A stretch of 64,000 bases of DNA from IMGVR_UViG_3300027771_001853:186001-250000, one strand, 5' to 3'; shown: positions 2 through 52,591, numbered from the stretch's first letter. Program-made: numbers and translations. The notes: generated by a model not told the origin, from the letters alone.

Positions 2-1540
2 CTGTGCGTATGGGTTTGTTGATGGAACAGACACACATTGGTTTGCCAAGGTATTCGGTGGAGTACCGGTTTCATGATAAAAGCTGCCCCAGGTTACATT
101 AATGGGGATATTCCCATTTATTTGTTCATCCATTAAATATTCACACGCTCCAATAATGGAGATAGAAGCATGTGGTTTTAGGGTTAAACTATCACAGGAG
201 GAACCATTAGTGATAGTTGCTAATGGTGGTGTTATGCATTCGTACCACACTGTAGTTGTAGTTGTTGTTAGTGGTCCGGTAGTGGTTGTTGTGGTTGGGG
301 TACTAGTAGTGGTTGTGGTTGTTTGACCAGGTAACGTGGTGGACGTGGTTGTTTGCCCTGGACAACAAGGTATACCATTAGCTGATATAAGTGCTATAGA
401 TAACGCATTACAACCTAGCATATTTATTAGTCCGTTTGATGTTAGGTCCGATTGGGTCTCCACCATATTAGCGACAGGTATACCAACAATAGGGTTACAT
501 AATGGTTTCCAACATTCATTTTGTACTATCCCACCTGACACTAATAAGTTTGGTATTTGGAAGGCATAATTATCATCACAATTAAGTGAATTAAGTAATA
601 GTAATAAATTACCTGTGGCCCCATATTGTACTGGTACACCAGTACCCACACAACAACTTTCTATCCCACATGTCACACAAGGGTCACCAGTAGTTGTAGT
701 GGTACAACAATTATAACATGTGGTTGTAGTTGTGGTTATAGGAGCTACTGTTGTGGTAGTAGTTGTTAGGGGTTGTATTCCAGTTGTAGTGATAGTGATA
801 ATAGGGCACTGTTGACAATCGACAACACTACCAAGTAGTCCTCTTGTTGGTGGTGTTCCAAAAGTGTTTCCACACTGTCCTCCAACATACCCAGTATGCC
901 AATCACCACTACCCGGATTATTACTTACATCTATATCATAACTGGTTGGTCTGGGACTGTCACCCTCATAGTACATACATGTACCATCAGATAATTGAAT
1001 AACATCACCCTGACTTATAGGCCCTATAGCAGCAGTTAACTGGTTATGGAATGCCTGATTATTTGTATCAGTATTTGGTAAAAAACATGAACCTAAAGGC
1101 GGGGCCCCTGGTGTAGGAACTACTGGTACTGGATTAAAAGCGAGTGAATTATCACAATAACGCCAAGAATGATTGAGTCCGAAAACGGATGGTTGGGTTT
1201 CACACGCATCACAATCACCATATGGTTCAATAAACCAACCAGAATTTTGTAAAGAATGACCACCAAGATATTCAACATGTATAGCTTCTGGTGTTGCGAA
1301 GTCCCCTATATACTCAAAACAAGTCCAAAATTGTGGATATGGAGTTGAGTATAGTCTAATAAAGTCCCCAGGTACTATTTGATGCCCTGCACTTTGTTGG
1401 TAATAATAATTCTGAAAATGTTCATTGTTAGCTATTGTATTTCCTGGAGGCGAACCGGATTTACCAATATTACAATCGAAAGGGACTGGTACACTAAAAG
1501 GTTCGCTAGTAAAACAAGCTCTATATTTTTTATATCCCAT
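2..1540 (-). CDS. Partial (runs off left edge) Cys-rich, poly-Thr modular putative virion fibre/decoration protein; absent from ORF track
   Basis: ATG at 1540 (MGYKKYRACFTSEPF...); frame read as open to the window edge; contains TTTTTT linkers, GIESCC and C-x-x-Y-x-G modules like the 4512-aa protein; TATTTAT motif 16 nt upstream. Confidence 0.85.
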   Translation of the reverse strand, partial: MGYKKYRACFTSEPFSVPVPFDCNIGKSGSPPGNTIANNEHFQNYYYQQSAGHQIVPGDFIRLYSTPYPQFWTCFEYIGDFATPEAIHVEYLGGHSLQNSGWFIEPYGDCDACETQPSVFGLNHSWRYCDNSLAFNPVPVVPTPGAPPLGSCFLPNTDTNNQAFHNQLTAAIGPISQGDVIQLSDGTCMYYEGDSPRPTSYDIDVSNNPGSGDWHTGYVGGQCGNTFGTPPTRGLLGSVVDCQQCPIITITTTGIQPLTTTTTTVAPITTTTTTCYNCCTTTTTGDPCVTCGIESCCVGTGVPVQYGATGNLLLLLNSLNCDDNYAFQIPNLLVSGGIVQNECWKPLCNPIVGIPVANMVETQSDLTSNGLINMLGCNALSIALISANGIPCCPGQTTTSTTLPGQTTTTTTSTPTTTTTTGPLTTTTTTVWYECITPPLATITNGSSCDSLTLKPHASISIIGACEYLMDEQINGNIPINVTWGSFYHETGTPPNTLANQCVSVPSTNPYAQ

Positions 1541-1575
1541 AGTTTATTATTTAACAATAAATACCCACATCATGA

Positions 1576-4500
1576 TTAAATAGGCGTACATGTAGTTGTC
1601 GTTGTTACTGGACAACATGGTATCCTTAGTGTCGGGTCTTGGTTCTGATAAGGTAACCAAGCTTGGAGACCAGCACACGGTGTTGGTGCTGGTGGTGATA
1701 GTAGTACGGCCCCTGTCACTGTTGGTCCGGTTGGGCTATTTATTATTCTTGCACAAACCGGTACACCACTGATAATAAATAAGTGTGAGGAACCTAAACT
1801 TAAACCATTTATATCAGTAAGTAGTGTTCCAATTGCTACGTATTGTTGGAATACTCCGTTCGTATCAGAACAACACTCTTCCAAACCTCTACCAGTTACA
1901 TTTACAGTTGTTGTTGTTGTGGTTGGGCAACACCCGACTGATTGTCCTTTGTCTTCACATGTGTCACACTGGTCTGTCAACCCGGCTGGCCAAATAGGGA
2001 ATAAGAATGTACCACTAATTGTCCCTACAATAGGTGCACAACCAACACATTTATGGAAACAACAAGCCATACCGTCAAATTGACCACCACTAACCACCAA
2101 TCTAAAGGTATCGTCATTGTTCAATCCAGCAACTCCAGATACAGCACCAGGGTCACCTACTAATTCATAAACATCCCCAGTACAACAATGCTTTACATAT
2201 TGTACTTCTTGGGTTGTAGTGGTTGTGGTGGTTGGTAGTGGGGCACAACACCCTAATGGGAGTGCTTGGTCTAAGGTATAACAATCACTATACACTATTC
2301 CTGGTGTAGTAAAAGTTGATACCGACAAACCAATAGGGTTATTTATAACTTTAAAACATCCCCTTATAATGAGTCCAGTAGTATCTACCAATTGGGTACT
2401 AAACGCTTGACCAACGATTAGACCATTAAGATACACTTCAAATGCTCCTAACGCTACATATTGGTCAAATGCCCCAGTTACTGGGTCCATACAACAAGAC
2501 TCAACACCTATTGTACCACCTATTGTAGTTGTGGTAGTACAGGGAGCTTCCTCATCAAGTACACATATATTACAAGGGTCCTGATAAACAAGAGATGAGT
2601 AGATATTAACTGGTGTTATGGAAACAGCTACACCTGGACCACTCACGTTTGAGACGAACTCCCAACACCCTTCTTGAAGTGAGAATGGTGCTGTAATAAT
2701 ATTACCATATACTACGTCACCTAATATTAAATTACTGTTTAACCAAGTTAATATCACACCTGTAGCTATATACTCATCATAAGGTGGACAACATTGTCTA
2801 ACACCTAAGGTTGGGGATGGTGTTGTAGTAGTTGTGGATACCGGTATTGTAGTTGTCGTTGTTACTGGACAACACAAAGTGTAATTGGTATTTGTATTTA
2901 ATTCTGCACATGATGATGATACAAAAGAAGGTGCAAACATATTAGTTTGTATTATACCAACCGGGTTATTTATTATTTTCCAACAACCAGTATAATCGGA
3001 TGGCATTATAGTACTATAAAACGCGTCACCCAAATTCATCCCCGCTAGAATCGTATAGAGTGTCCCTGCGGCTACAAATTGTAAGGTAGGGTCGCAACAA
3101 TTTTCTAAACCTAATGGGCCAGAAGATGTGGTAGTTGTAGTTACTGGTCCTGTTGTGGTTGTTGTGGTTGGTGGTACCGTGGTTGTTGTTGTTGTTGGAC
3201 AACTACAAGGTTGGTACATTTCTCTACAAATCATACAAGCGTAAGGATAATCCGTTGTCCAAACATCATCTATGTTATTTAAAGTTAACATAGGTGCTCC
3301 CACTACTGGTTCGTAGGTATGGATAGCTTCGTCAACAATAGTAAGACACATATTAGGACATGGTGTGTGTATAGTATCTATTGGTACTATACTTGGGTTA
3401 CCTGTGGTACCACTAACTAAACTAGGTATGTCGTATACGGTATTATAATACACTTGATTTTTATTACAACATAGGTTTTCCCCCCAATATGGGTTAGTTG
3501 GGTCATAACAACATGTTAATAGTCCGTATGTCGTACAACAACCAGTATGACTTGTACCTGAATAATTGTAACATGGGTCTTGTTTATCAACGTTACGAGG
3601 ATTTACCGATATAGGTCCTATTTGGTTGTCTATATATTCCCATACTGTCTGTCCTAAATCCCATGCTGGGTTACTTGCCGGTATAGACGTGTTAACAATA
3701 GTTGAAGCTGTGGCTATTTGGTATGGGTTGTTACCACCAACACAGTTAATATTATCACACCATTGTACTACCCACGATGCTATTTCAAGTGGTGGTATAT
3801 TCACATATTGGAATGGAACTATCTGGTAGTGTCCAATACCAGGTGCGTTATTTTGATTTACGTAGATATAATCAGGTGCACTACCTCCTTGTATTTCATC
3901 TAAACAGTACGTACCATCGGCTGATGTTAAACATACATCATCCTCTACACTTGTAGATGTACCAGTGTAAAATATTTCTAAGTGAGAAACACCAGATAAA
4001 CAGAAACAATCTGCACACCTTTTCGTTGTAGTGGTTGTAGTTGAGGGACAAGGGACAGACCAACTAAAATTAGTCTCCGTACAACCTGAACATATACAAG
4101 GTGGGTCCCCTGCCGCGACACTATTAGTACACCAAAACTGATATGTAAATCCAGCCGGAACTACTGGTGCTGACGGTTCACTTGGAACAACAACATAACA
4201 CCCAGGAACCCCGTTAATTGTACCCAAAAGTCCTTGACCTACTAATATGTCGGTTTGGTCATTTGGATACGATAATATCGTATTACAATCAGCTGTTAAT
4301 GAGAACACATACTCTTCACAACAAGCAGATAACGCGAAAGGTAGACATACGGTAGTAGTGGTTGTAGTACAAGGAATCTCACACGCGGCACAACTATAAA
4401 GTGGTATAGGTGGGTAATTTATACTAATTATTGGGCCCTGTTCTCTACCTATTGTTTCCCAACATTCATTTGTAAGAGTATCGTAGAAAGCATTATAAGA

Positions 4501-7500
4501 AGTTAAACCTGAAGCTGGATTAGTTAAATCACCACACCACCTAGCAAACACAATATTATTTGTTTTACAACAAGCTGATAAACCTTGACATGTTGTGGTT
4601 GTTGTGGTTGGTGGGACTGTTGAGGTTGTTGTAGTAGCTGACCATGCTGTTGTTGTGGTTGTTGTTGGTGGGACTGTGGTTGTCGTACATACAATATGGT
4701 GGGTATCTAAACATCCACCAATAGAAAAACAATCTTGGTAGAATATACTTGGCACTACACTTATATTGTAAAGGTCCGGTCCTGGTATTTCTATTCTCTC
4801 ATAACACATATTAGTCCCCACATCATAAAACACTTGACCGATAGGCATAAAACTTAAATCTGTTTTAGTACAACCAGAACAAGTTTCATTAGTGGTTGTA
4901 AACTTTCTAACAGGTCTAATATATTTTGGGCTACCTTGTATAATATTATTATTTATGTCTGGGTAAGGTATGAGAGATTTACTATGTAATTCTGAACTAA
5001 ATAACTCAGGGAATATGGAGTCTCTACCCGAACATGGTGTACCTGTAGGGTAGTTAGGTCCATTAGACATACCTAAACTTAAATGTATATTATTAAACCC
5101 ATTAAACATTGGGAAGTATTCCGCCCTACTGGCATCACATTCACTAGAAGTCCAGTAATACCCACCTTCAGCAAAATTATATGTAGAGTAAAAAGTTTCG
5201 TTTGGTGGTCCTGCGGCTAGAGGGTTTTCTAAACCAATAGTTTGACCCCCAGTAGAACCAACAAGTCCATTATACATTTCATTCATTTCTTTAATGGTAG
5301 GTAAGTACCAATCTGTGTATCCACTAAATGAGAATGTAGAACATATGTGAGCTGCACTATGAAGAGTTATATTAGAAGCGTCTAAATTACTTCCAGGGTT
5401 TGGCCAAACACTATTACCTATGTATTCTTTTGTACAATCCAAATAACCACCACCAGCATCAGCCTTTTTATCTTTACAATCATATGTAAAAGGTACTGTA
5501 TTACCACTACAAGGGTTTGTTCTAGCCCAATTAACATCAGTAGTACATGAAGGACAACACGGGTAACCGTAAATGTCTGGTGTACAAGCATTATTTATTT
5601 TTGATGTGTTGTCACTACCCGCGAATATTTCTCTTGAAGTTCCACTAACATAAAGGTTCATACATCCCCACATTGTAAATGTATGTGCTGAATCAGTCGC
5701 GTTTGCGGCTATTATATTTTGGGGTAAATCATAGTTAGATAAATTTACATCATATGGTGAAGCTTCCAAATAATTCCCTTGACCATCATGATAGAAGACA
5801 ACACCACCCGCTGGTCCCGTATCACCTATACTATATGTTTGTCCAGTTAAACAACAACAAGGTTTAATACCATAACAAATATGAGGACGAGTAGTAGTTG
5901 TTGTGGTAGGTCTATTAGTTGTTGTGGTGGTTGTTTTTGGTGGGTCCCATATTGTTGTAGTAGTTGTAACACAATCATCTACTATCTTATGAGTTATCTC
6001 ACAACACTCACAATCATCATAAGGTCCATTTAGTGGTACATTGACGTTATAATTTGTTGGTCCTGGGTACGCTATTCTTTCATAACATTGTCCAGATAAT
6101 GGGTCAAACCATGTATTACCTATTGGTACAGTAGATAAATCAGTAGTTGTATATCCAGAACAAGTTGCGTAATTATATGACCTAACAGGTCTTAACCACA
6201 TAAATAGGAAATTCTTCTGCAGTACCTGCATTGTTGTACCCCACGTAGTTGGGAGTCCAATAGCAATTGTATCGTATACTGGGTTGGCTGGATGTTCACT
6301 AGAAGTAATCCATATTGGTGGTTGGTCTGTTGAACCTGAAAAAGGTTTTAAGTCGTCTAAGTCGGCTAAATTATACAATGGAGATAATAGAGCTTGTCCT
6401 GGACCTATATTAAACCATAATTTTAACCATTCGTTATAACTTGGAGCAAACCAATCATCATACCCGTTATAAATTAAAGTGTCGAGATACGTTGCCCATG
6501 GGGTTGGGTCTGGACACCCAGCAGCAATAATCTCATTTGTATTTATTTTTCCCATACCAATTGAAGTACCTAGAGTTGGGCTCGGAAGTACAGGTGTGCC
6601 CCAACAACCCCATCTCATACCAAAACCACCAATTTCTGTTGATTTAGGTGCTACTTCATATATGATGTTATTAATCGTATCAACATGAAATACAAATCCT
6701 CCGGCTTGACCTACATCACCAACATTAGGAACAACACCAATTATAACGTCATCTTCACAACAACAAGGTTTTAACCCCCATATTTCACTTGGTCTTGTTG
6801 TAGTAGTGGTAACAGGTTCACAAATAATTTCATTAATTTGCTCACAAGCATCACAATCTATATAAGGACCTCCAGGATTTGGTACTGGAGCGGTAAAATC
6901 AAAATATGTTAGTCCTGGGTCAGCAATATGAGTAAAGCATTCACCTGACGTAGCGTCATACCAAGTTCCACCTATAGGGATTGCTGATAAATCTGTATAT
7001 GTAAAACCAGAACAACCAGTATCGTTTATACGTTCTGGCATACAATTCGCACCATTAGGGTAATCATCATTACAACAACAAGAATTAAGACCCATATTTG
7101 TAGTAGTATCATCCCAAGTTATACCTTTGTTAGTTAAACTTCCACCCCACCCTGAATTTGGATTTGTGTCACAATCTGAACAAGTGGTTCCGTTAGTTGA
7201 ATTCGTTACAGTACATACTAAATTAGAATAGAAGTCAGGAGTACCTTGACCCATATATCTTAGACAAGTACACGTCATACCTGGTATTCTTGAAGGCCCC
7301 AACCCTGACGGACCATTAGTGTAGGTTATATTGTCATTCCAGTAACACCATCTAACGGTTTCACCCACAGATGGACTTCCAAGATATTGATAGAAATCTA
7401 GATTGTTCGCTAAATAATCGACAGATGGGACAGTACTAGTATTTGTAACACCATCATAACAAGCGTCACCAATGTAGTTTGGTGTACCGAAATATTCGAT

Positions 7501-10500
7501 GCCCCATGTTTTGTTGACTGTCCCCAGAATGGAGGCTATATTAGGTATGTAGTCAGAAATTTCATTCCAACAAACCTCAAATAGGTGAGATACTGGAGCA
7601 GTGGATTTGGTGATGGTGGTGGTAGTGGTAAGGGTAGGAGATTGTGATAGTGACGATTCAAGGTTTTGGAACCTAGAAAATAACGGTACCACACCAACAT
7701 CAGTAGATATATTTAGTTTTTGTCCAAGGCATCTAGCTTCACCTGATTCGTATTTAACTTGGTCTACAATATCTAGAATTTCTATAGATTGGTGTCCATA
7801 GGCGTTATCCTGATACAAATTGATAAAGTCACCAATCTTAAGTGCGTTTACCGATGTTCCATCATTTCTAACAAAATTAGATAGGGGACCACCTCCTGAT
7901 GCTAATTGTTGTGTTGTGGTTGTGGTTGTTTGTCCAAATAAGGTAGTGGTTGTTGTTGTTGGTATAGCGTATGTTGTAGTAGTTGTTGTTGGTATAGCGT
8001 ATGTTGTAGTAGTTGTTGTTGGTATAGCGTATGTTGTAGTAGTTGTTAGTTGCCCAAATACTGTTGTTGTAGTTGTAATTGGGGGTATAGTGTATGTTGT
8101 AGTAGTTGTAGTTGGAGGTATAGCGTATGTTGTTGTAGTTGTAGTTGGCGGTATAGCGTATGTTGTTGTTGGTGTTGTAGTTGGGGGTGTAAATGCCTTT
8201 TTGTCTATATAAGTGCATGAAGTAGTATCACTTTTTGTAACATATTGGTCACCATCTTTTGTCCATACTTTAACTAAATAAGCTAGACCATTAACATTTA
8301 TATCTTCCCAACCTACCTTATTAACCCCCCCATTAGTAGGTTCGTAATATAGAACTGTTGGTGCGGTGGTAATTAGTTTAGTTTTTTCAGGTGAGGTTAT
8401 TTGACCGAAAATATCTCTAGTATCACCAATAAATTGTGGTACCTGTTGTAACATACTTAAACTTTGTAAATCTTCACACACACAACACTCATTATTAGTA
8501 CCTCCGGTTGATAGTCCGTTAACACCAAAATGCCACCAATTACCAACTGGGTAGTATGGGACCGCTGATGAAGATACTGTTCCCATATATTTTAAACATA
8601 GTACATCATTATTAAAACCATTTAAAGTGGAGTGTAGGGTAACTACTTGACCTACACCTGGACTACCAACCCAACTATAAAAGTAATTACCTCTAGTTAC
8701 CATATCATCTAACCCAACTGCTGTCATAAAGTCTATAAGTCCTGATGTTGTTCCCGGGGCGTCAATAGCTGATATGCCCACACCAGGTGGGAATGGTGAT
8801 GAAGTGGGTGATGGTAAAAAAGAAAATAGTTCACATTCCTCAAACACGTGAAAAGTACGTATCTCCGCTAATCCACCATCACAACTATAACAATCATTAT
8901 GTGTTGATAATACGGTAGCGGTACCAACAGGACAAATATCGTAATTAACGCTTAAAGGGCCCCATATTCTATTACCTACATAAGCAATCCAGTAGTCACA
9001 AAATATAGCCATCAATATACCGAAATTACTACAATTACCTAGGGCGAATATTGGGTCGTTAGGGTATGACCAAGTATAAACACCCAAATATTTAATGCAA
9101 TTTGTAAATGTTCCTAGTGCTATACCTGAATCTGGGCAGGCGACTGTCCACTCCATTTCTACAGTTATCACTTCTCCAGGGTTTGGGCTACCTAGATGAT
9201 TATAAAAATTTTGATTATTTAATGAATATTCTTGTACTGCGGCTAAGTCTTGACCAAGGTATGCACTATCAACGTACCCTGTCTGAGAATCAAGCCATAC
9301 TGGAGCAAATTTAGGGTACCCATTCAGTTGTGGTATAGAAGGGTCACCTGGACAATCCTCAAACATATGTAATGTAACATCCACATTTGCGTTTGCGTTT
9401 AATGGTATAGTTGGTAAGGGAGTGCTGTTTGGTAAAGGGTTTAGGTTAACATAGTCTCCCAAGGTCACAGTCGTCTTAGGTTTACTATAGTGGGTACCTT
9501 CCGGCATTATCGGTTGGTATGTCCTTGTATCAGCTGACGGACAACAACATCTTTCTACCCCATAAATTTGTCTAAAAGTGGTACTAGTTGTTGTTGTTGT
9601 TCTAAATATCTTGGTTGTAGTTGTGGTTGTTGGTGCACAATATGGGTCTTCACCATCTCCATTAGCCATACATTCAACACAGTTATCAATACCAAAAAGA
9701 CCTAGTGGGTTTAAGGTTATCCCATTGGGTGGAAGAGGGTTAGGTGTCACTATAACCTTATAACACGCCTTATGGTCTATGTCATTAAATGTCTCACCAA
9801 TAGCCAAACCACTAACTGAACCAGGGTTATCCACAATCCATTGTTCTGCTGTTGAACCAGTGATACAACACTCTTCTACTGTAATACCTGAAGTACATGC
9901 TGTATGAAAACATACTGTCGCTGATAATGTAGCTATACCAATATTATTAGCTTGTGTAGTCCCTAACCAATTAGATAGTAAGTATTCGTGACTATGTACT
10001 GATATAAAACCAAAATGTGTTAACCCACTTACACACCTACCATCAGGTGTTTTACCTGGACCGTAACCAGAATTCCAAAAACAAGCATCCGCACAATAAG
10101 GGTTTGTTTGTTTTATAGCATCAAAATTATATAGACCACCACCATTATTTGCGGCACCAATATCTACAAAGTCCACCGCGGGAACTACTCTACCTTCAAC
10201 AGCTCCATACGCATTTAATTGAGTAATCCTTTCCTGTTGGGTATCATTTACTGGTAATGTGTAAACAAAACTATTAAATGAACCATTATTACCTGGAGTA
10301 CCAGTAGGTTGGTCCCAAACACCATTATAGTATGTACCCATAAAAGAATCAAAATCTCTTAAGTAATTTTCTGTTGGTGTTATTTTCTGTAACCCAGATG
10401 TTACATTAATACTGTTGAGTTGGTTGGTATTCCAATCAGTACAGGGTACTGGTGGTGTTATAACACCAACGCCACTTGGAGCATTACATACCGGTAACCA

Positions 10501-41734: not shown

Positions 41735-41735
41735 A

Positions 41736-44740: not shown

Positions 44741-44741
44741 A

Positions 44742-45560
44742 TTACACTTCCCATTGTTTTATGAATTCCTCCATTTGTTCTTTAGTCATAGTTTCAGTCA
44801 TAACTGATAACTGTGCATTACTTTGGTAGAACTCGTGTGTAGCTTTTGGTGACTGTCCTGGACCGTCATGTGGAAGATGAAATAGTATAGCGTCTTCATC
44901 CATCACTCTACTAATATCATAACCCAAAGCTCTTGTTCTTATGGTTATTTCGTTATCTTCGTAACCCCAACCTTTAAACATTGGGTTGTATCCACCAAAT
45001 TTGTTATATCTATCGTGATTAAAGAACACACACCCACCAACACTATCGTAATGACCAACAAAAACCTTACCATTACTATAATTAACTTGTTTAGATTCTG
45101 GTTTATATTTTGTTAAATCATCGTAGTCTAGAGTTTCCATAAACTCTTCTTTGGTATGTTCGTATAGGTTTAAAAATAAACCGTTGTACGGATAACAAAT
45201 CGCTAGATTATCTTCTTTTATTAACCTATCAGCGGTCATCTTCATATATTTAGGATGAATGATTATATCCGTATCTAATGAGACTATTACAGGTCTGTCA
45301 GTCTCCTTAGAAGCTATATTATAACATTTAGGTCTAACATATATCCCATCGTTTTCATGGAATATATATTTATCATTTTCTGTTAAGGTAATTGACTCTG
45401 TTATTTTTTGTTCAGCGTCGTCCTCTATAAAAATAAACTGTGTGTTATCAGCATATTTCCTATAAAATTCTTGTATAATCTCTAAATTTTGTTGTCTGGC
45501 AACAGTATCTATTCTTACGTGTACCAAAAAACAAACATCGGATAAATCTACTTTTTTCAT
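44742..45560 (-). CDS. GT-A glycosyltransferase with GT7 C-terminal (galactosyltransferase-like) motif
   Basis: LDTD, GGYN..F.GWGYED, FHL.H. Confidence 0.8.
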   Translation of the reverse strand: MKKVDLSDVCFLVHVRIDTVARQQNLEIIQEFYRKYADNTQFIFIEDDAEQKITESITLTENDKYIFHENDGIYVRPKCYNIASKETDRPVIVSLDTDIIIHPKYMKMTADRLIKEDNLAICYPYNGLFLNLYEHTKEEFMETLDYDDLTKYKPESKQVNYSNGKVFVGHYDSVGGCVFFNHDRYNKFGGYNPMFKGWGYEDNEITIRTRALGYDISRVMDEDAILFHLPHDGPGQSPKATHEFYQSNAQLSVMTETMTKEQMEEFIKQWEV

Positions 45561-46399
45561 TTTGCGTGTTCTTTTTTAATTTTTTTTAATGTCCTAACCA
45601 CCGTATCAATATCTACCTGTGGTGCCCCTGTTGGGTAATGACCGTGTTTCTTTTTATAGTGTTCTGCACCTACATTATAATTTAAGTGCCATTCTGGTGT
45701 GTGTGAGATTGTACTCTCTGTTATACAGTTCTCTATATCTTCTAGATATAACCAACTTTCCCAGATATCCGGAAACCACCAGAATTCTGGACAAAAACCA
45801 TTTTTATAGCATTGGTAGCTATGTTCCACATGCTCCCAAGCATTTTTAAATATTGGGTCAAACACCCCAACTTTATCGATAACATCTTTGTGGTAATAAC
45901 AAAAAGCTCCTACCGAATTAGGGTATAAAGCTATTTTTGTATCATCGTAATATAGGACTGTCTTTGGGTTTGGTTCGTTTAAATTATCTGTTTCTGCTCT
46001 TTCTTCTAGTGTAGAAAAACCCTTACTATCTTTTCTATTAGCAGGACCTTGTAGAGCGTAACTTAAATGTTTAATACCACTAGCTTCTGAAGCTTCTATA
46101 TATTTTTCAAACACAGAATCATCTTTTATCAATACGTCATCTTCCATTATAAAAATGTGTTCACACCCTTTTGATATTAAGTAATTTATAGCGTCACTTT
46201 TACTCTTGCCAACACACTCATTTACTTCGTGTTGTATTATATGGGCTTTTTTTGGGTACGATTCTGGGTTATATGGGGTACCATCATTAACTATGACAAA
46301 ATTTTCTATCCAGTCAGGTACTGTAATAGCACTCTGTAATATTCTATGTTCAGCTTTATATGTTACAAGTCCTAAACCTATTTTACTTTTGTTGTTCAT
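45557..46399 (-). CDS. Glycosyltransferase family 2
   Basis: IVNDG, IMEDD, VGVFD; likely start MNNKSK at 46399. Confidence 0.8.
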   Translation of the reverse strand: MNNKSKIGLGLVTYKAEHRILQSAITVPDWIENFVIVNDGTPYNPESYPKKAHIIQHEVNECVGKSKSDAINYLISKGCEHIFIMEDDVLIKDDSVFEKYIEASEASGIKHLSYALQGPANRKDSKGFSTLEERAETDNLNEPNPKTVLYYDDTKIALYPNSVGAFCYYHKDVIDKVGVFDPIFKNAWEHVEHSYQCYKNGFCPEFWWFPDIWESWLYLEDIENCITESTISHTPEWHLNYNVGAEHYKKKHGHYPTGAPQVDIDTVVRTLKKIKKEHAK

Positions 46400-47729
46400 T
46401 CTGCGTTTTTTTAATAAATCGTTTATAATCATAAGTCCCTAGTAACTGATTTACGTGACCTAAATCTGGATTGTCTCTTAACTCCTCATATTCATCTAAT
46501 AATCTACCACAAGATTCTTCAGAGTGTACATTAACATAACCATTTTTAATCAAACTTAACCCTATTAGGAACCCAGAAGCTGGATTTGTAACATCCGTAC
46601 CTATGTCCTGTATAGTTTTTAAAGCTCGTTTACTTAAAGCCATAATGTACCCTTGTGAACCAACAGTATTTGTTTTATAACCACCACCAAAATTATAAAA
46701 ACTACCTAATGAGTTTTTATTTATAACTAATTTTCCGTCTTTAGCTATTAAGTCGATACCGTTCGCGATTATACTATTATCTTTTACGTGAGTTCTTGAC
46801 GTGATGACCCCACAATTTGTTGTTTTAGTGTAAATTTTAACAAACTCGGTTATTACATCATTTAATGGTGCTGTTTCATTAAAAAACACATATAAATCAC
46901 ATTCCTCATCTTCAGGTCTATCCAACCAGACTACATTATTGTAAGTGCAATTGTCTACTACGCATTTTTTTAACTCTTCTTCCTCAAAGGCACTATTAAC
47001 AACAACACCAACTTTTACTTTATTATTTTTTATAGGTTTTATAGTGTTAAACTTTAAACCCCCTTCTTGTATTATCGGGAGTTTGGTAAAGTGTTTCCCA
47101 ACAAATTTAAATCTATTTCTGTGCCATTCATCATTTACCATACCCACTGACTTATGGGTAACCTTAACCTCAAAGTTTACACCCACTTTTACACCCGCTA
47201 ACCAATTAGACACACAAAAATCTATCTCATAAAAATGAAACCCCTTAAAATAGTCATCAAATTTCTTTTTTATTAAATCTCTATCAACTAAAAAGAATAA
47301 ACCATCTACCAATAAAGCGTCTAATACTTCATTTTTAAAAATTCCTGAATATTTTGACTGCCATGTCCGTCCTTCATGTGTATGCCAAACACTACCCATC
47401 ATTTTAGCCCAGTTGGTCCACCACATACCATTTTCTGGTAATTCCGTTGTTCCAGCTATACCTAATATCCCATAATCTGGATTATTATGTTTTAACTTTA
47501 ATAATTTCTTTGCCCACCCTTTAGTTTCTATTATTAAATCATCGTGACAAAAAACAATATTATTATTTTTTGCCTCTTTTAACCCTTTATTATATAATTC
47601 TGTTAAAGAATATTTCCCAGGGTTTTCATAAATGATAATTTCTATGTCCTTTAAACCTGATGTGGACTTTAGATGTTTGACGTATTCCTCGTCTCTTTGT
47701 TTTGTACTTACTACTACTGATAATCCCAT
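46383..47729 (-). CDS. Glycosyltransferase-like (Glyco_tranf_2_5) with degenerate second domain
   Basis: YNKG, VFCHDD, GIAG, VDGLF, FHFYE.DFC. Confidence 0.75.
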   Translation of the reverse strand: MGLSVVVSTKQRDEEYVKHLKSTSGLKDIEIIIYENPGKYSLTELYNKGLKEAKNNNIVFCHDDLIIETKGWAKKLLKLKHNNPDYGILGIAGTTELPENGMWWTNWAKMMGSVWHTHEGRTWQSKYSGIFKNEVLDALLVDGLFFLVDRDLIKKKFDDYFKGFHFYEIDFCVSNWLAGVKVGVNFEVKVTHKSVGMVNDEWHRNRFKFVGKHFTKLPIIQEGGLKFNTIKPIKNNKVKVGVVVNSAFEEEELKKCVVDNCTYNNVVWLDRPEDEECDLYVFFNETAPLNDVITEFVKIYTKTTNCGVITSRTHVKDNSIIANGIDLIAKDGKLVINKNSLGSFYNFGGGYKTNTVGSQGYIMALSKRALKTIQDIGTDVTNPASGFLIGLSLIKNGYVNVHSEESCGRLLDEYEELRDNPDLGHVNQLLGTYDYKRFIKKTQNEQQK

Positions 47730-47733
47730 AATT

Positions 47734-48348
47734 TTATTTTATTCCTGTACTACCAAAACCACCTTCGTCTCTGTTAGTACTTTCTAGTTTAGATACTTTT
47801 ATATATTTTGCCCAATTGGTGTTAAGAATGTTATTTAAAACTGCTTGAGCTACCCTATCTCCATCATTAATAGTAAAAGGGTCTTCACCTAAATTTATTA
47901 GGATAATTTTTATTTCACCTCTATAACTTCTATCAACAGTACCAGGTGTATTAAGAACTGTTATACCGTGTTTTAAAGCTAAACCACTTCTGGGTCTTAC
48001 TTGTAATTCATAATTCTCTGGTAATTCAAAGTAAAGGCCGGTAGGAATTAATTTCCTTTTACCTGGATGAATAACCATAGTATCGTTTGGTATTGATGCT
48101 CTTAAATCAAAACCACTATCGTCTTTATGTGCGTATTCTGGGTCTGGATTATTAGATGTGTTGACATACTTTACCTCCATCCTTGGAATGTCTTCATCAG
48201 TTATAAAAGAAGTGTTTTCTAGTTCTTCTAGGTCTATTCCTAGAATTTTTGGTAATTCCAATGGGGTTTCGTCTATTGAGTTACTGTTTGCGTACCTTTC
48301 TATTTGTGATAAAGTACTTTTCATTTTTTTATTAGTGTTATTATTCAT
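47734..48348 (-). CDS. dut: Trimeric dUTPase
   Basis: SGFDL, RPRSGLA, GTVD..YRGEI, GDRVAQ, R..GGFGSTG. Confidence 0.95.
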   Translation of the reverse strand: MNNNTNKKMKSTLSQIERYANSNSIDETPLELPKILGIDLEELENTSFITDEDIPRMEVKYVNTSNNPDPEYAHKDDSGFDLRASIPNDTMVIHPGKRKLIPTGLYFELPENYELQVRPRSGLALKHGITVLNTPGTVDRSYRGEIKIILINLGEDPFTINDGDRVAQAVLNNILNTNWAKYIKVSKLESTNRDEGGFGSTGIK

Positions 48349-48354
48349 AGTACC

Positions 48355-49086
48355 TTATTTCAATAAATTTATTTTTAACATTAACCTCATGACCTCTAAA
48401 AGATTTTTTTCACACCTTTCTTTAATTTCTTTTTTTCTAAATAAATCCCCTTTTCCCCAATATAGTTTGTGTGCATCACTTCGTTCCCACTGAGAATCGT
48501 GATGGTCATCTGTTTTTATTCCCATAGCTGAACTTATAACACCTAAAGAGTACAACCCCCTACCGGAAGCAAAACCCCAAACATCTTTTGTGTCTATAGC
48601 TCTAATCTCCCAAGGTTTAGTTTCGTGATTAGGGAATATTTTTGGTGGTTTTAGACCATTGATAAGCATTCTTTTTGCTATACATGGAATAGTGAATGAT
48701 TTTATCTCATGTCCACATAATTTAAAACCTAAATTATCAACTTTTTCAACTATTCCTCTGAATTTAGTAATAATTTCTTTTTCGTCTAACGGATTTTCAC
48801 CTAAATCACACCAGGTCTCAACTTTTGGTGTGTTGTCAGTTTGTAGGAATGCTGCACTTACACATATAATTTTAGCAAATTCAGGTATTCCTGCAGCTCT
48901 TTTTACGAAAACTTCTTCTGACGATAATTTGTCATCCTCCGTAAACCATTTTCTAATGTAATGTATCACATTATTTTCCCAACTATCGTGTAATAGTGGG
49001 TATTTGTTTTCAAGTTCACTTAAACTAGAAGTTATTCCAGCTGTTTCAATGTGAAAAAATAGTAGTTTGTTTAAATTCTCTGACAT
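48355..49086 (-). CDS. PolB-type 3'-5' exonuclease homologue, apparently inactive
   Basis: FFHIET, PEFAKIICVS, CGHEIKSFTIP, KPWE...DT, CEKNL; Exo I/II/III Asp positions substituted. Confidence 0.7.
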   Translation of the reverse strand: MSENLNKLLFFHIETAGITSSLSELENKYPLLHDSWENNVIHYIRKWFTEDDKLSSEEVFVKRAAGIPEFAKIICVSAAFLQTDNTPKVETWCDLGENPLDEKEIITKFRGIVEKVDNLGFKLCGHEIKSFTIPCIAKRMLINGLKPPKIFPNHETKPWEIRAIDTKDVWGFASGRGLYSLGVISSAMGIKTDDHHDSQWERSDAHKLYWGKGDLFRKKEIKERCEKNLLEVMRLMLKINLLK

Positions 49087-49410: not shown

Positions 49411-50643
49411 TTATTGTTTATTTTTTTTATCTACGAGCATTTTATAATACTCCGCTCTATTTTTAGTAACCACATCTATATGGTACTTTTGTACCGATTC
49501 GTATAGTCTTTCCCCCAAATCCTCCCTTAAAGAAGGGTTAAGTAGTAAAGTTTTTATGTGTTTATCCCACATTTTGTGGTTTTTATGTGTGTCAACTAAT
49601 AAAGCGTTACCTTCATTATTAAATCCTCCACCGTGGTTAGCGGCACTTATTAAATCTATCTGGTATGGACCATAATTCTGAGCAATTAATGCTTTCTTAT
49701 GGAACCCAGCTTCAATAACTTTTAATTGGGATTTAACCCTATTAAATGTATGCTCTTTAATCGGAGCAAGACTTATATCGAATTTATTATAGTTAGAAGC
49801 GTATGTGGTAATAGGTTTAGTCCACACCCTTCTATAAGGCATATCAACCTCATTAGCGTATTCTTCCTCAACAAATTTTAATAAGTGTTTATGGTATTCT
49901 GGTGAAACAGTACTGAACTTGTTAGTGAAAATTTCTTCATATTTGTACCATATAGATTCATGTGGTTCAATTGGTCTTTGTTTTTGTTCACCAGTTGCCT
50001 GGTCTATAAAAGTTATACTCCCTCTAGTGTCAAAACCACACAATACAAATTGTAATTTATCCATATGTGGTTGTAATTTTCCCACAACACCGGATAGTAT
50101 TCTTAAATCTTCCATATGCGATGAACCACCTAACCAACCCACCCTTAACCTATCAGAATCTGGTGTGTCAATTTTGAATTGGTTTTCTTTGGGGTCAACA
50201 GCATTAGGGAAAACCTCCACTGATGGGTTTAGTTTCCTTATTTCGTCAGCGAAGATTGGTGTTGTTGTATTAACATGTTCAGCTAATTTTAAATTTTCTA
50301 CAATTAATTTATCTAAATTATTTTGTTTTACCATCATATGAGCTGGATGGTCTATTGTAGGTAACCAATAATCGTCCAAATCCATAATACTGACTATCCC
50401 TAACTTTTTTAACCTAGGAGCGACTTTTTTAGATAAGTCGTAATTAGGTGATAATGTTCTGTGATAATGAATGATATCGTATTTTTTTAAGTATTCATCA
50501 TTTTCTAATTGTGGTTCGTAGTCAATGTCAACCCAAAAATCTTCTGGATATAAATTTTGTAAGGCTAGATGTGGGTCAACACTTCTAAATTTGGAGACTC
50601 CCGTTCTATCACTTGGTATTACTAGTACTTTAATTTGGCTCAT
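49411..50643 (-). CDS. Glycosyltransferase, GT-B (GT4-like)
   Basis: R...P, MDLDDYW, TTT, PNAVD, VGWLGG.SH..DL, FN..KS.LK.IEAG; likely start MSQIKV at 50643. Confidence 0.8.
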   Translation of the reverse strand: MSQIKVLVIPSDRTGVSKFRSVDPHLALQNLYPEDFWVDIDYEPQLENDEYLKKYDIIHYHRTLSPNYDLSKKVAPRLKKLGIVSIMDLDDYWLPTIDHPAHMMVKQNNLDKLIVENLKLAEHVNTTTPIFADEIRKLNPSVEVFPNAVDPKENQFKIDTPDSDRLRVGWLGGSSHMEDLRILSGVVGKLQPHMDKLQFVLCGFDTRGSITFIDQATGEQKQRPIEPHESIWYKYEEIFTNKFSTVSPEYHKHLLKFVEEEYANEVDMPYRRVWTKPITTYASNYNKFDISLAPIKEHTFNRVKSQLKVIEAGFHKKALIAQNYGPYQIDLISAANHGGGFNNEGNALLVDTHKNHKMWDKHIKTLLLNPSLREDLGERLYESVQKYHIDVVTKNRAEYYKMLVDKKNKQ

Positions 50644-50731: not shown

Positions 50732-50752
50732 ATTAATATATAAAACTTAAGA

Positions 50753-52591
50753 CTATCTAAGTTCTCTAATGTCAAACGTTCTAACACCGTCAATTGTAAT
50801 AGCTCCATAGAATCTATTGTTAACCACCTTTTTAGCGTATCTAGTCATGATACCCTTGATTGGTGCAAAGTTAAATGGATTATACATTGTTGGTGTAAGT
50901 TGTAATGGTACATAAGGAGCGTAAATATATCCTGTGTCTAATAAAGATGTTCCTTTATGTCCAATTAACACTTTGTTAGCTGGGAAGTAAGGGTCTCTAT
51001 ATACAGTATATCTACCTGATAATGTTCCAATCTTCTCAATACCCATATTGTACTGGTCTTGGTCTGGAGCTGCGTTTGAAGCGTGGAAGTATTCTAAGTC
51101 ATCAAATATTGCAGAACATTCAGATGAACAAACAATCCAGTTAGCACCACCTCTCAACGTAGATTTGTGAATCTGTGCTGAAATTTGGTTAATAGCAGTA
51201 ATCAGAGTTTGATTCCAGTCTTTTTGAGTATAAGGAGCTTGTCCCGCTTGGAAACGTTTCCATCCGTTGTAATCCCATCTTAATGTCCAAGATGCTGCCG
51301 CTCTTAAATCTTTAAGAATCTCACGGTCTATCTCAGCCGCAACTTCTTCAGATAATAGAGCTGTTAATTCAGCTTCTGCATCAATGTTATGGAACGCACT
51401 AACGTCTTGTGCAAGTTCTGGAGACCAAGTAGCTCTTAATTTTCTTTCTGTTACCGAAACAGTTACAGAGTCTAAATCAAATGAAACTTCACCTAATTCA
51501 TCTTCAAATTCAAGGTCTTGGTAAATTCTGTACTCAGCAGTAAAGTTAGTAGTTGCTAGTGTTGCGTTAACATTAGCTCCAACGTAACCATCTACAGACT
51601 CACATGTAATACATGCTGGACATGATAAGTCTAATTCAACGTAAAGGTAACCTTCACCATCACAAACGTTGTCATAAGTAGAATCTTTTCCTGGCCAGTA
51701 AGAAGTACCTTGTCCTGGAATATTATCTACAATACCTTTTCCGTATTTCTGAGTTACTAATCTAAAAGGTACATACCCTTGAGCTGCAACTACCTGAGTA
51801 GTACTACCAGTTGGACAACAAGTTACAGGATTTGTCGCTTTGAATTTCAAAGAAGACAAGAACTCTTCAGTATCCATCTCGTTACCATTAGGTCCAACTA
51901 ATTTACCTTGTCCTAAGTTATTAAATCCACCTACTCTAACAAGTAAGCTTCTAAGTCCACCATTAAGACAGTCGTAACTATTATATGTCCCACTAGTAGT
52001 TGAACCAGTAAGAGTTTCGTAGATAGTGGATGGAGTCATTGTTCCACCAGTAGTGTTCCACGTTACAAATTGAGCTGTACGTGACACACCTGAATATCTA
52101 CCTTTCGAAATATCGAATAAACCTCTACCATCTTCATAGTATTGGTCATATAAGTTTACAGTGTCGTAAGTTTGTTGATTTGCGTTAGTTGCACCTGGCA
52201 TTCCTTTTGGTTCGAAATGATTCCAAGTGTTATCTGCAGCACCTCCCCAACGTCTGTCGGAGATTTTTGGTACGAAGTAGAACAATTTACCAATTGGTAA
52301 GTTCAAAGCTTGTACCGATACAATGTCGTTAGCTAGTAATTTAGAAAATACTCTTCTAATTATTGGGAAAACAACTGTTTCAAATGAACCTGAGGCATCA
52401 GCTTGTGTTGCCTCGTTGATTAAATGCGTCGCTTGGTTTTCATATAACTGAGCGATGTTTTCTCTTGTATGACCTTTAAGTCCATCCAAGAAACCAAGTT
52501 TGTTCCATTTTTCAATAGTGTCTTCTCTAATAACTTTAAGATGTTTCAATCCGATATTACCTACTAATCCTGATTCTAATAAAGCACCCAT
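50753..52591 (-). CDS. Major capsid protein (T4 gp23-like)
   Basis: FPIIRRVF, VSVQ....P.G.LFY, RKLRA.WS.E.AQD, EIDREI, YAPYVPL, GIMTRY. Confidence 0.95.
   Translation of the reverse strand: MGALLESGLVGNIGLKHLKVIREDTIEKWNKLGFLDGLKGHTRENIAQLYENQATHLINEATQADASGSFETVVFPIIRRVFSKLLANDIVSVQALNLPIGKLFYFVPKISDRRWGGAADNTWNHFEPKGMPGATNANQQTYDTVNLYDQYYEDGRGLFDISKGRYSGVSRTAQFVTWNTTGGTMTPSTIYETLTGSTTSGTYNSYDCLNGGLRSLLVRVGGFNNLGQGKLVGPNGNEMDTEEFLSSLKFKATNPVTCCPTGSTTQVVAAQGYVPFRLVTQKYGKGIVDNIPGQGTSYWPGKDSTYDNVCDGEGYLYVELDLSCPACITCESVDGYVGANVNATLATTNFTAEYRIYQDLEFEDELGEVSFDLDSVTVSVTERKLRATWSPELAQDVSAFHNIDAEAELTALLSEEVAAEIDREILKDLRAAASWTLRWDYNGWKRFQAGQAPYTQKDWNQTLITAINQISAQIHKSTLRGGANWIVCSSECSAIFDDLEYFHASNAAPDQDQYNMGIEKIGTLSGRYTVYRDPYFPANKVLIGHKGTSLLDTGYIYAPYVPLQLTPTMYNPFNFAPIKGIMTRYAKKVVNNRFYGAITIDGVRTFDIRELR

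What the first reader, a model, noticed from the sequence alone, without database searches (positions are those of the whole stretch)
2..52591. Candidate phage-encoded virion glycocalyx: glycan island between the capsid gene and mucin-like fibre genes
Seen: a ~23.5 kb block (27089-50643) of about 12 glycosyltransferases, sugar-nucleotide enzymes and tailoring enzymes starts immediately after the major capsid gene. In the same window, ~17 kb encodes four Cys/Thr-rich proteins, three with P/T-rich TTTTTT linkers. No flippase, polymerase, lipid-carrier transferase or membrane GT is recognisable, so this is unlike Gtr or O-antigen conversion loci. Established: some mycobacteriophages O-glycosylate capsid or tail-tube subunits with their own GTs, and Mimiviridae glycosylate fibrils using similar clusters. 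Inference: soluble GTs decorate the virion in the cytoplasm, producing a mucin-like, fucosylated/sulfated coat.
Basis: partly seen in the sequence, partly recalled or inferred. Interest (0 to 1): 0.85.

Follow-up and report, generated by a model that had tools for sequence, protein, structure and literature searches.

The report
Phage sugar island beside poly-threonine fibre genes
A 298-kb uncultured marine T4-like phage carries a 17-kb sugar-making gene island and a long array of giant cysteine- and threonine-rich late proteins, and comparative evidence suggests, without proving, that phage enzymes coat the threonine runs of these virion-type proteins with sugars.

Summary
The glycan genes proper are 30693-47729 (17 kb) plus one conserved glycosyltransferase (GT) at 49411-50643. 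There are about 10 GT candidates, all soluble. No flippase, polymerase or lipid-carrier enzyme lies in the window.

The window is positions ~186001-250000 of a 297,623-bp IMG/VR contig of the "Far-T4" clade; the host is probably Bacteroidota. Capsid-GT adjacency is a lineage-specific ~30-kb inversion. In 76 relatives the GT and island lie about 3 kb from Thr-rich fibre-like genes.

The island site (dUTPase to PhoH) is filled in nearly all relatives with hypervariable sugar genes. The Cys/Thr proteins are six consecutive genes (~8,440 aa). They carry the same TATTTAT promoter-like motif as head genes; island genes do not. Their poly-Thr runs are under strong purifying selection.

A GT-A-fold enzyme (phrog_4417) follows the array just outside the window. 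This family is tightly linked to poly-Thr proteins: 89% of 79 uncultured loci, and C-terminal poly-Thr tails on capsid or tail proteins in 8 of 9 Firmicutes phages.

Virion O-glycosylation of the Thr runs is therefore plausible. The island's own target remains unproven: virion, host surface or DNA.

The parts
2..1543 (-). N-terminal 514 aa of a 1977-aa Cys/Thr-rich protein (5.5% Cys, 13% Thr, 15 runs of T5+). The rest lies left of the window.
   Evidence: TATTTAT motif at 1557-1563
1576..15114 (-). Giant 4512-aa protein with about 18 Cys-rich domains separated by 21 poly-Thr linker regions. It has no signal peptide. It shows weak Lcl_C/DUF1566 lectin-like matches and a propeller-like N-terminal lead.
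15132..15974 (-). 280-aa Cys-rich protein without Thr runs. It heads the operon that contains the giant gene.
   Evidence: motif at 15992-15998
16036..17235 (-). 399-aa Cys/Thr-rich protein. It is the short local version of a fibre-like gene found at this position in 30 of 62 relatives (up to about 2,400 aa, ConA/LamG-like N-terminal lead).
   Evidence: motif at 17241-17247
17286..19826 (+). Block of five small conserved genes of unknown function ('A block'), divergent from the fibre genes. In relatives it lies between the fibre genes and the core GT.
19844..29909 (-). Conserved core genes that are not glycan genes: g20634, g22173, g24056, g25975, a sigma-like gene (26380-27078), g27089, g27965, g29033 and g29340. 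19844-20674 has no match in distant relatives or sister L083.
29919..30668 (-). PhoH-like ATPase, the conserved right-hand flank of the island site.
30693..47729 (-). Variable glycan island of 17 kb and about 21 genes. It holds GDP-fucose and GDP-amino-deoxyhexose-type pathways, methyl-, sulfo- and amido-transferases and 9 GT candidates, all soluble.
47734..49086 (-). dUTPase and a 3'-5' exonuclease-like gene, the conserved left-hand flank of the island site.
49411..50643 (-). Core glycosyltransferase (true start at Met56 of the long ORF). It has a GT-B fold of the GT4-like retaining type and is about 60% identical across thousands of marine phage contigs.
50703..50730 (-). G+C-rich hairpin followed by a T run (terminator-like), between the capsid gene and the core GT.
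50753..60092 (-). T4-type head module: terminase, portal, two small genes, prohead protease, scaffold-like gene and major capsid protein gp23.

Best explanation
The phage makes a set of very large, Cys-rich, fibre- or adhesin-like late proteins whose domains are joined by short runs of pure threonine. These runs are most likely acceptor sites for O-glycosylation in the host cytoplasm by phage-encoded soluble GTs.

The best candidate for the enzyme that acts on the Thr runs is the GT-A-fold protein of family phrog_4417. It is encoded directly after the fibre-gene array, about 8.4 kb left of the window.

The conserved GT-B enzyme (49411-50643) and the hypervariable 17-kb island would then supply unusual nucleotide sugars (GDP-fucose, an amino-deoxyhexose). 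They would also extend and tailor the glycan by fucosylation, methylation and sulfation, giving each phage lineage its own coat.

**Shown:** gene content, solubility, late-type promoter motif on the fibre genes, selection on Thr, clade-wide synteny, and the statistical link between phrog_4417 and poly-Thr.

**Inferred:** that the fibre proteins are in the virion, that Thr is glycosylated, which enzyme starts the chain, and that the island feeds this pathway.
For: 1. **Soluble island, no export machinery.** There are about 10 GT candidates plus a likely GDP-fucose route (GMD and an Fcl-like reductase scoring below NCBIfam's cut-off). None has a membrane segment and no lipid-carrier or export gene is present.
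2. **A cytoplasmic fibre-gene array.** Six consecutive Cys/Thr-rich genes without signal peptides total about 8,440 aa.
3. **Selection on Thr.** Between orthologues about 69% identical, Thr inside runs is 95.6% conserved although only 43.7% of those codons are unchanged. Thr elsewhere is 66.9% conserved and other four-fold amino acids 70.2%. No run is replaced by Ser, and 204 of 215 Cys are conserved.
4. **Late-type promoter motif.** TATTTAT lies within 50 nt upstream of 10 of 53 window genes, against 1.6 +/- 1.2 in shuffles. In relatives it precedes scaffold (94%), protease (93%), g20634 (100%) and the fibre-locus gene (93%). It precedes only 2% of island ORFs and 6% of the core GT.
5. **Clade-wide synteny.** In 62 relatives, Thr-rich stretches total 9,900 residues in the 10 kb upstream of the core GT and 0 residues downstream. 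Some are hundreds of residues of TPTNT-type mucin-like repeats.
6. **phrog_4417 is a GT-A enzyme.** The AlphaFold model has pLDDT 96.6. Its best PDB matches are GT24, GT8 and GT6 enzymes, and D-x-D and His are invariant.
7. **phrog_4417 tracks poly-Thr in uncultured phages.** Of 79 IMG/VR loci centred on phrog_4417, 89% have T5+ runs. That is 74.8 runs per 100,000 aa against 2.5 in capsid-centred loci.
8. **phrog_4417 tracks poly-Thr in cultured phages.** In 8 of 9 sampled Firmicutes phages the gene sits near capsid or tail genes (next to virion-type Thr-tailed proteins in Bromius). Those proteins end in T5-T12 tails.
9. **A hypervariable island site.** The site is filled in nearly all relatives with different sugar genes. 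This pattern suits an exposed glycan.
Against: - No proteomic or structural evidence places the Cys/Thr proteins in the virion. They match no known fibre.
- The island lacks the late motif and sits with dUTPase, an exonuclease, PhoH and a sigma-like gene. That placement suits an earlier gene class.
- Two relatives with no island at this site still have poly-Thr proteins.
- Comparable fucose/GT clusters in T4-like cyanophages are usually read as host-envelope genes (PMC9602691).
- One island cassette is syntenic with a Flavobacteriaceae genome bin, as expected for polysaccharide-locus genes.
- The phrog_4417 loci from IMG/VR are related to one another, so their counts are not independent. The Firmicutes sample is small (9).
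Confidence: 0.45

Rival explanations
1. The island is an auxiliary gene set that remodels the host's own surface polysaccharide (LPS, capsule or protein O-glycan) during infection. It would use the host's lipid carrier, flippase and ligase. The benefit could be blocking superinfection or stopping progeny from sticking to debris. The Thr-rich proteins would be unrelated to it.
For: - The GT families (GT2, GT11, GT10-like, NodZ-like), GMD/Fcl, DegT, WbuC and the sulfotransferase are typical of O-antigen and capsule loci.
- GT11 relatives occur in 103 phage records, mostly T4-like cyanophages, where such clusters are interpreted this way (PMC9602691).
- A four-gene cassette (35620-38176) is syntenic at 52-62% identity with an Altibacter (Flavobacteriaceae) genome bin.
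- Island genes lack the late motif.
- Peripheral GTs of polysaccharide loci are normally soluble, so the absence of membrane segments does not argue against this reading.
Against: - No initiating transferase, flippase, polymerase or ligase is present, so the model depends wholly on host parts.
- Every member of the clade keeps an island at one site, next to the Thr-rich genes and a 60%-conserved core GT. A host-strain-specific accessory function does not obviously predict this.
- A lytic jumbo phage gains only briefly from altering a doomed cell's surface (inference).
Confidence: 0.3
2. Some or all of the GTs, above all the conserved GT-B enzyme next to dUTPase and the exonuclease, glycosylate modified bases in the phage DNA. 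This would protect it from host nucleases, as in T-even phages and the recently described DNA-glycan clusters.
For: - The phage is T4-like.
- The core GT is flanked by nucleotide-metabolism genes and belongs to the non-late gene class.
- Phage GTs related to LPS enzymes can build mono- to tri-saccharides on 5hmC, and such clusters can lie near structural genes (10.1101/2023.12.21.572611).
- Arabinosylated 5-hydroxycytosine occurs in RB69 and DLP3 (PMC13326640).
- Hypervariability would suit an arms race with restriction systems.
Against: - No hydroxymethylase, thymidylate-synthase homologue, TET-like dioxygenase or cytosine methyltransferase was hit in the window.
- Fold matches of the core GT are generic GT4 enzymes (MshA, BshA, PglA), not T4 alpha- or beta-glucosyltransferase.
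- Ten GTs with fucosyl-, sulfo- and methyl-transferases imply a glycan far larger than any known DNA modification (inference).
Confidence: 0.1
3. The poly-Thr runs are not glycosylated. They are short, stiff, protease-resistant spacers between Cys-rich domains. The link with phrog_4417 would reflect some other shared function of that enzyme.
For: - Thr-rich or Pro/Thr-rich linkers are common in secreted bacterial proteins (general knowledge).
- The runs have a nearly fixed length of 5-7 residues and are often flanked by Cys or Pro, which could be structural.
Against: - Ordinary linkers tolerate Ser/Pro/Thr exchange, yet these runs are 95.6% Thr-conserved with no Ser runs.
- The same kind of run occurs as a free C-terminal tail on capsid and tail-tube proteins of Firmicutes phages, where it cannot be an inter-domain spacer. 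It co-occurs there with a GT-A-fold enzyme.
Confidence: 0.15

Closest known systems
Mycobacteriophage virion glycosylation (Freeman et al. 2023, as summarised in PMC12619734)
   Same: Phage-encoded soluble GTs act in the cytoplasm on virion subunits. In mycobacteriophages the glycans sit on the C-termini of capsid and tail-tube proteins. This resembles the Thr tails found here next to phrog_4417 in Firmicutes phages.
   Different: - The host phylum and GT families differ.
- Here the putative acceptors are internal T5-T7 linkers in giant fibre-like proteins, not capsid or tube tails.
- A 17-kb hypervariable sugar island is present.
- Nothing has been shown biochemically.
- The original paper could not be read.
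Mimivirus-type fibril glycocalyx with clade-specific glycogene clusters (PMC9614988)
   Same: A virus-encoded, host-independent cytoplasmic pathway uses bacterial-type sugars. Clusters of 9-33 genes differ between clades and include methyl- and sulfate-related enzymes. The glycans coat long surface fibrils.
   Different: - Those are eukaryotic giant viruses. Here the virus is a tailed phage with T4-type head genes.
- The carrier proteins are unrelated.
- The glycans are proven there and hypothetical here.
'LPS/cell-wall' gene clusters of large T4-like cyanophages (P-SSM2, S-SSM7, S-SCSM1; PMC9602691)
   Same: A T4-like marine myovirus carries GMD, GDP-fucose synthase, alpha-1,2-, NodZ- and O-fucosyltransferase-like genes and several GTs in one cluster. 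GT11 homologues are shared at 32-33% identity.
   Different: - The clade (Far-T4) and the likely host (Bacteroidota) differ.
- The island is at a fixed, clade-wide hypervariable site next to Thr-rich fibre genes.
- The cyanophage clusters are attributed to host-surface change, also without proof.
Cytoplasmic O-glycosylation of serine-rich repeat adhesins in Gram-positive bacteria (GtfA/GtfB and follow-on GTs; own knowledge)
   Same: Soluble GTs glycosylate long hydroxy-amino-acid repeats of a giant adhesin before it leaves the cytoplasm. A GT4-type GT-B enzyme starts the chain and several GT-A enzymes extend it.
   Different: - Those repeats are Ser-rich and are exported by a dedicated Sec system.
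- No sequence relationship was detected. The PDB sequence search of the core GT found nothing, and SdgB appears only at rank 40 by fold.

Membership tests
Far-T4 group of T4-like phages | gp23-type major capsid protein, gp20 portal, T4-type prohead protease and terminase, most similar to RM378-like and uncultured aquatic sequences | tested here: met
   Pfam Gp23 7e-72, Portal_T4 7e-78, Peptidase_S77 1e-25. The best cultured relatives are Flavobacterium phage immuto, Microcystis Mel-JY01 and Rhodothermus RM378. More than 598 IMG/VR relatives match at 62-74% identity.
Far-T4 group of T4-like phages | phoH gene close to the structural genes (Roux et al. 2015) | tested here: met
   PhoH lies at 29919-30668 and in relatives within about 10 kb of the capsid gene (PMC4360716).
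Gtr-type serotype conversion (GtrA/GtrB/GtrC) | Membrane flippase GtrA, bactoprenol glucosyltransferase GtrB and a membrane serotype-specific GT | tested here: not met
   No such Pfam families were hit, and no hydrophobic segments occur in island proteins.
Wzx/Wzy- or ABC-dependent O-antigen/capsule locus | Initiating phosphoglycosyl transferase, flippase or ABC exporter, polymerase and chain-length regulator | tested here: not met
   None was detected in the 64-kb window. The rest of the 298-kb genome was not examined.
Phage virion glycosylation system (mycobacteriophage type) | GT gene(s) embedded in or next to the late structural operon | tested here: inconclusive
   Met for phrog_4417, which lies directly after the fibre array. 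Not met for the island, which lacks the late motif and sits in another gene block.
Phage virion glycosylation system (mycobacteriophage type) | Glycan covalently attached to virion proteins | not testable with these tools
   Needs glycoproteomics of purified particles.
T-even-type DNA glycosylation | Enzyme that makes a hydroxylated pyrimidine (dCMP hydroxymethylase, ThyA homologue or TET-like) together with a DNA GT | tested here: inconclusive
   None is in the window. About 234 kb of the genome was not seen. The core GT's fold matches are generic GT4 enzymes.
GT-A fold, metal-dependent glycosyltransferases (for phrog_4417) | Rossmann-like GT-A fold with a D-x-D motif and a downstream His or Asp metal ligand | tested here: met
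   The model has pLDDT 96.6. Foldseek probability is 1.0 to UGGT catalytic domain, LgtC, glycogenin and GTA/GTB (TM 0.40-0.46). D100, D102 and H263 are invariant in 54 sequences. Activity was not tested.
GT-B fold GT4-like retaining glycosyltransferases (for 49411-50643) | Two Rossmann domains, similar to MshA, BshA and PglA | tested here: met
   The model has pLDDT 90. Top PDB matches are MshA, GlgM, PglA and BshA at E 1e-14 to 1e-10. Donor and acceptor are unknown.

The most novel reading that the evidence does not exclude
phrog_4417 is an unrecognised family of poly-threonine-directed protein O-glycosyltransferases. Together with genetically encoded poly-Thr tags, it would form a widespread virion glycosylation system. 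That system would be shared by Firmicutes siphophages and herelleviruses (tags on capsid and tail-tube C-termini) and by aquatic Far-T4 jumbo phages of Bacteroidota (tags as linkers in giant fibres). In the latter, a hypervariable sugar island at a fixed genomic site would diversify the glycan, giving each phage lineage its own mucin-like coat.
Probability: 0.35. Interest if true: 0.85.

Novelty: new variant of a known kind. Interest (0 to 1): 0.72.

Why it matters
Virion glycosylation is established for only a few phages, yet it affects immune recognition, stability and adhesion.

If the Thr runs are glycan acceptors, a simple sequence signature would predict glycosylated virions across very different phages. 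The signature is poly-Thr plus a phrog_4417-type enzyme. Some of these phages are cultured dairy, enterococcal and staphylococcal phages, where the idea can be tested within weeks.

For marine ecology, Far-T4 phages are abundant. A lineage-specific sugar coat on very long fibres would bear on particle stickiness, host recognition and grazing. It would also reassign a large class of "auxiliary metabolic" sugar genes from host metabolism to virion construction.

If instead the island acts on the host envelope or on DNA, its fixed position and hypervariable content still mark it as a major arena of phage-host conflict in this clade.

Tried and rejected
- **Cultured-phage matches.** Megablast of 20 kb against GenBank phages found no match. 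tblastn of the giant protein in two pieces against GenBank phages found no match.
- **Family scans of the Cys/Thr proteins.** Pfam, PHROG and PDB-sequence scans gave only a sub-threshold Lcl_C match and a protease PHROG in the 640-aa protein.
- **ESM Atlas.** It gave leads only: propeller-like, Lcl_C and ConA/LamG.
- **One read-through gene.** The idea that 2-1543 and 1576-15114 form one gene read through a stop was rejected. They have separate starts and a separate promoter-like motif, and they are called as separate genes in a sister phage.
- **Capsid adjacency.** Capsid-GT adjacency as evidence of function was rejected.
- **T4 late promoter.** TATAAATA is not enriched: 9 sites seen, about 12.6 expected.
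- **Inversion junctions.** A search for inverted repeats at the junctions found nothing convincing.
- **Fold of the core GT.** It is a generic GT4 fold and does not discriminate between targets. Weak PDB-sequence hits of two island GTs (beta4GalT7; an uncharacterised ORF) were uninformative.
- **Whole-genome co-occurrence.** Testing island size against Thr-rich genes was not feasible, because loci are limited to +/-10 kb.
- **Freeman et al. 2023.** The paper is not held in the library.
- **tRNAs.** None in the window.


Full report
**What the window is.** Almost all genes lie on the minus strand, and G+C is about 33%. A T4-type head module occupies 50753-60092. It holds a gp23 capsid protein, gp20 portal, prohead protease, scaffold-like gene and terminase. 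The capsid protein is only 36-42% identical to any GenBank phage; the nearest are Flavobacterium phage immuto, Microcystis Mel-JY01, huge-phage genomes and Rhodothermus RM378. It has more than 598 relatives at 62-74% identity in IMG/VR. Two IMG/VR contigs are 100% identical across the part of the window their loci cover, protein by protein. One is 297,623 bp, and the window is its positions ~186001-250000. This is the uncultured "Far-T4" group, in which phoH near the capsid gene was noted before (PMC4360716). Its marine members were predicted to infect Bacteroidetes (PMC7198788). Three observations agree with that host:
- Relatives encode proteins with Bacteroidota-style signal peptides.
- The closest cellular GMD genes lie in Saprospiraceae and Cryomorphaceae genome bins.
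- An island cassette is syntenic with an Altibacter bin.

**The observation.** The glycan genes are real:
- two GMDs, an Fcl-like reductase and a further epimerase/dehydratase;
- a DegT aminotransferase plus a fragment;
- methyl-, amido- and sulfo-transferases and a WbuC cupin;
- about 10 GT candidates, seven or eight of them solid.

None has a membrane segment, and no flippase, polymerase or lipid-carrier enzyme was found. 27089-29909, PhoH, dUTPase and the exonuclease are conserved core genes, not glycan genes. The four Cys/Thr-rich proteins are confirmed. The giant ORF encodes 4512 aa with 4.8% Cys and 14% Thr. It has 45 runs of T4 or more grouped into 21 linker regions.

Fetching the contig to the left shows that the partial gene is 1977 aa. 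It is followed by a 636-aa protein (9.4% Cys) and then a 640-aa protein with Thr linkers and a protease-like C-terminus. So there are six consecutive genes of about 8,440 aa. None has a signal peptide.

**Comparative anatomy.** In relatives beyond the closest sisters the order is: Thr-rich genes (one strand), then a block of five small genes, the core GT, exonuclease, dUTPase, a variable sugar island, PhoH, nine core genes, and then the capsid gene converging from the other side. In the window's phage and three close sisters the ~30-kb segment from g20634 to the core GT is inverted. Only there does the GT follow the capsid gene. A terminator-like hairpin separates the two genes. Adjacency to the capsid gene is therefore not evidence of function.

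The island site is informative in another way. It is filled in nearly all of about 90 relatives, with 3.8 to more than 8.7 kb, against 17 kb here. It is empty in only two. Its contents vary widely. Among 112 ORFs from relatives, Pfam finds 17 epimerase/dehydratases, 14 GMDs, 8 GT2, 6 DegT, 6 FkbM methyltransferases, 5 GT2_5, 4 rhamnosyl O-methyltransferases, 4 acetyltransferases and others. The core GT, in contrast, is about 60% identical across about 8,000 scored database homologues (the search's candidate cap). Its model is a GT4-like GT-B fold.

**Are the Cys/Thr proteins structural?** There is no homology to known fibres, but regulation points that way. The heptamer TATTTAT lies within 50 nt upstream of 10 of 53 window genes, whereas shuffles give 1.6 +/- 1.2 with a maximum of 6 in 2000. 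Those genes are:
- terminase, g55460, prohead protease and the scaffold gene (the capsid gene follows it by 28 nt);
- g20634 and g25975;
- the first gene of the small-gene block;
- three Cys/Thr genes (the giant gene follows one of them by 17 nt).

The 636-aa and 640-aa genes and all but one counterpart in a Tara Oceans sister phage carry it too. Frequencies of the motif in relatives:

| Gene class | With motif |
|---|---|
| scaffold | 94% |
| prohead protease | 93% |
| g55460 | 100% |
| g20634 | 100% |
| g25975 | 96% |
| fibre-locus gene | 93% |
| other Thr-rich ORFs | 45% |
| core GT | 6% |
| exonuclease, dUTPase | 0% |
| island ORFs | 2% (9 of 452) |
| sigma-like gene, g27089, g27965 | 0% |

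The fibre genes thus belong to the head-gene regulon. The island belongs to another class, together with nucleotide-metabolism genes and the sigma-like gene.

**Selection on threonine.** Two orthologues of the giant protein exist (4488 and 4457 aa). At about 69% identity, every Thr run of the window protein has a counterpart at the same place in at least one orthologue (20 of 21 regions in both), mostly at nearly the same length. No run is replaced by Ser, and 204 of 215 Cys are conserved. Thr inside runs is 95.6% conserved although only 43.7% of those codons are identical. By comparison, Thr elsewhere is 66.9% conserved and other four-fold amino acids 70.2%. The constraint therefore acts on the amino acid, not on the DNA repeat, and is far stricter than for ordinary linkers.

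**Thr-rich genes across the clade.** The survey covered 62 relatives with at least 6 kb upstream of the core GT.
- 49 have an ORF of at least 250 aa with at least 12% Thr, and 14 reach 20-32%.
- Thr-rich windows sum to 9,900 residues upstream and none downstream.
- Some proteins contain hundreds of residues of TPTNT-type repeats. One is collagen-like.
- The N-terminal part of the fibre-locus protein resembles viral ConA/LamG clusters, which is a lead only.

**A GT family tied to poly-Thr.** The gene right after the array encodes a 323-aa soluble protein of phrog_4417, annotated "unknown function". Its model (pLDDT 96.6) is a GT-A fold. The nearest matches are the UGGT catalytic domain, LgtC, glycogenin and the blood-group transferases. 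D-x-D and His are invariant.

In GenBank the family occurs in 75 phages, almost all of Firmicutes hosts. In the six sampled siphophages the gene lies inside the morphogenesis operon, directly after the major capsid or major tail gene; in the two herelleviruses it follows a sigma-factor gene. In 8 of 9 sampled phages the neighbouring proteins (capsid, tail-tube, decoration, head-maturation or unannotated small proteins) end in or contain T5-T12 runs, and a control locus has none.

In IMG/VR, 70 of 79 loci centred on the family (89%) contain T5+ runs. That is 74.8 runs per 100,000 aa, against 2.5 in capsid-centred loci of the same clade. The carriers are again Cys-rich. No paper linking this family or poly-Thr tails to phage glycosylation turned up in the library, which does not prove that none exists.

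**Weighing the explanations.** The most likely reading (about 0.45) is that the Thr runs of late, fibre-like proteins are O-glycosylated in the cytoplasm. phrog_4417 would be the Thr-directed enzyme, and the island would be the source of lineage-specific sugars and extensions. The weakest link is the island's part. Its regulation and neighbours fit an earlier gene class, and look-alike clusters in cyanophages are attributed to host-envelope change (PMC9602691). That rival gets about 0.3. DNA glycosylation gets about 0.1. It is well documented in T4-like phages and can involve LPS-type GTs (10.1101/2023.12.21.572611; PMC13326640). It is possible mainly for the core GT. Unglycosylated spacers get about 0.15.

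**Comparison and novelty.** The closest proven systems are mycobacteriophage virion glycosylation and the Mimivirus fibril glycocalyx with clade-specific glycogene clusters (PMC9614988). The closest sequence-level analogues are the cyanophage sugar clusters. Four features appear new:
- a fixed, hypervariable island site in Far-T4 phages;
- its ancestral proximity to mucin-like or poly-Thr fibre genes;
- the strict selection on Thr;
- the phrog_4417 to poly-Thr association, which spans distant phage groups.

I rate it a new variant of a known kind. It is of high interest because it is directly testable in cultured phages.

Noticed in passing
window 19844-50643 compared with L001-L104 and L111-L186: A ~30-kb segment (g20634 to the core GT) is inverted relative to 76 relatives. 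Only this phage and three close sisters have the capsid gene next to the GT. No inverted repeats were found at the junctions. 19844-20674 sits at one junction and has no match in relatives other than identical contigs.
   Followed up: yes
window 1557, 15992, 17241, 17265, 22165, 26364, 54141, 54948, 56208, 60098: A conserved promoter-like heptamer, TATTTAT, lies 8 to about 40 nt upstream of head genes, fibre genes, g20634, g25975 and the small-gene block. It is probably the late promoter of this clade and differs from T4's TATAAATA, which is not enriched.
   Followed up: yes
L189, L190, L191, L274-L278 (GenBank Firmicutes phages): Major capsid, major tail, decoration and protease or portal proteins end in poly-Thr tails (T5-T12). 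Several lactococcal ones finish with the same ...TTTTTTTT(H/R)HD ending. They lie next to an unannotated GT-A-fold gene (phrog_4417).
   Followed up: partly
L106:17917-19839 (about 6.3-8.2 kb left of the window's start): A 640-aa protein has a Cys-rich N-terminus, three Thr linkers and a C-terminal protease-like domain (phrog_20754, GDSGA motif). It could be a self-processing or host-envelope-degrading fibre tip.
   Followed up: no
L106:15974-17884: A 636-aa protein with 9.4% Cys contains repeated ~35-residue units of the form GC(T/M)D...ACNYDP...DDGSC. No family match was found.
   Followed up: no
window 35620-38176 and L200: A four-gene cassette (WbuC cupin, methyltransferase, a 207-aa DegT fragment, GMD) is syntenic at 52-62% identity with a contig of an Altibacter (Flavobacteriaceae) genome bin. 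The short DegT-like ORF is conserved in several relatives, so it may be a functional small protein rather than a broken gene.
   Followed up: partly
L025, L034 and L014, just after the capsid gene: Relatives carry 0.6 to more than 10 kb of variable genes right after the capsid gene. These include several proteins with Bacteroidota-type signal peptides (MKK...L..SQ/AQ) and small Cys-rich proteins.
   Followed up: no
L175:1-2679 (minus strand): At the fibre locus of one relative, a protein of more than 890 aa consists almost wholly of collagen-like GT(N/D/S)GT triplets.
   Followed up: no
L187 (Escherichia phage Mt1B1_P17, 45046-48190): The core GT has 27%-identical homologues in phapecoctaviruses, where they form two of four consecutive GT genes near the DNA polymerase gene. 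Their function appears unannotated.
   Followed up: no
L014:15264-16823 and L011: The g20634 homologue, a late gene conserved next to the capsid gene, has acquired a short Cys-flanked poly-Thr insert in some relatives.
   Followed up: no
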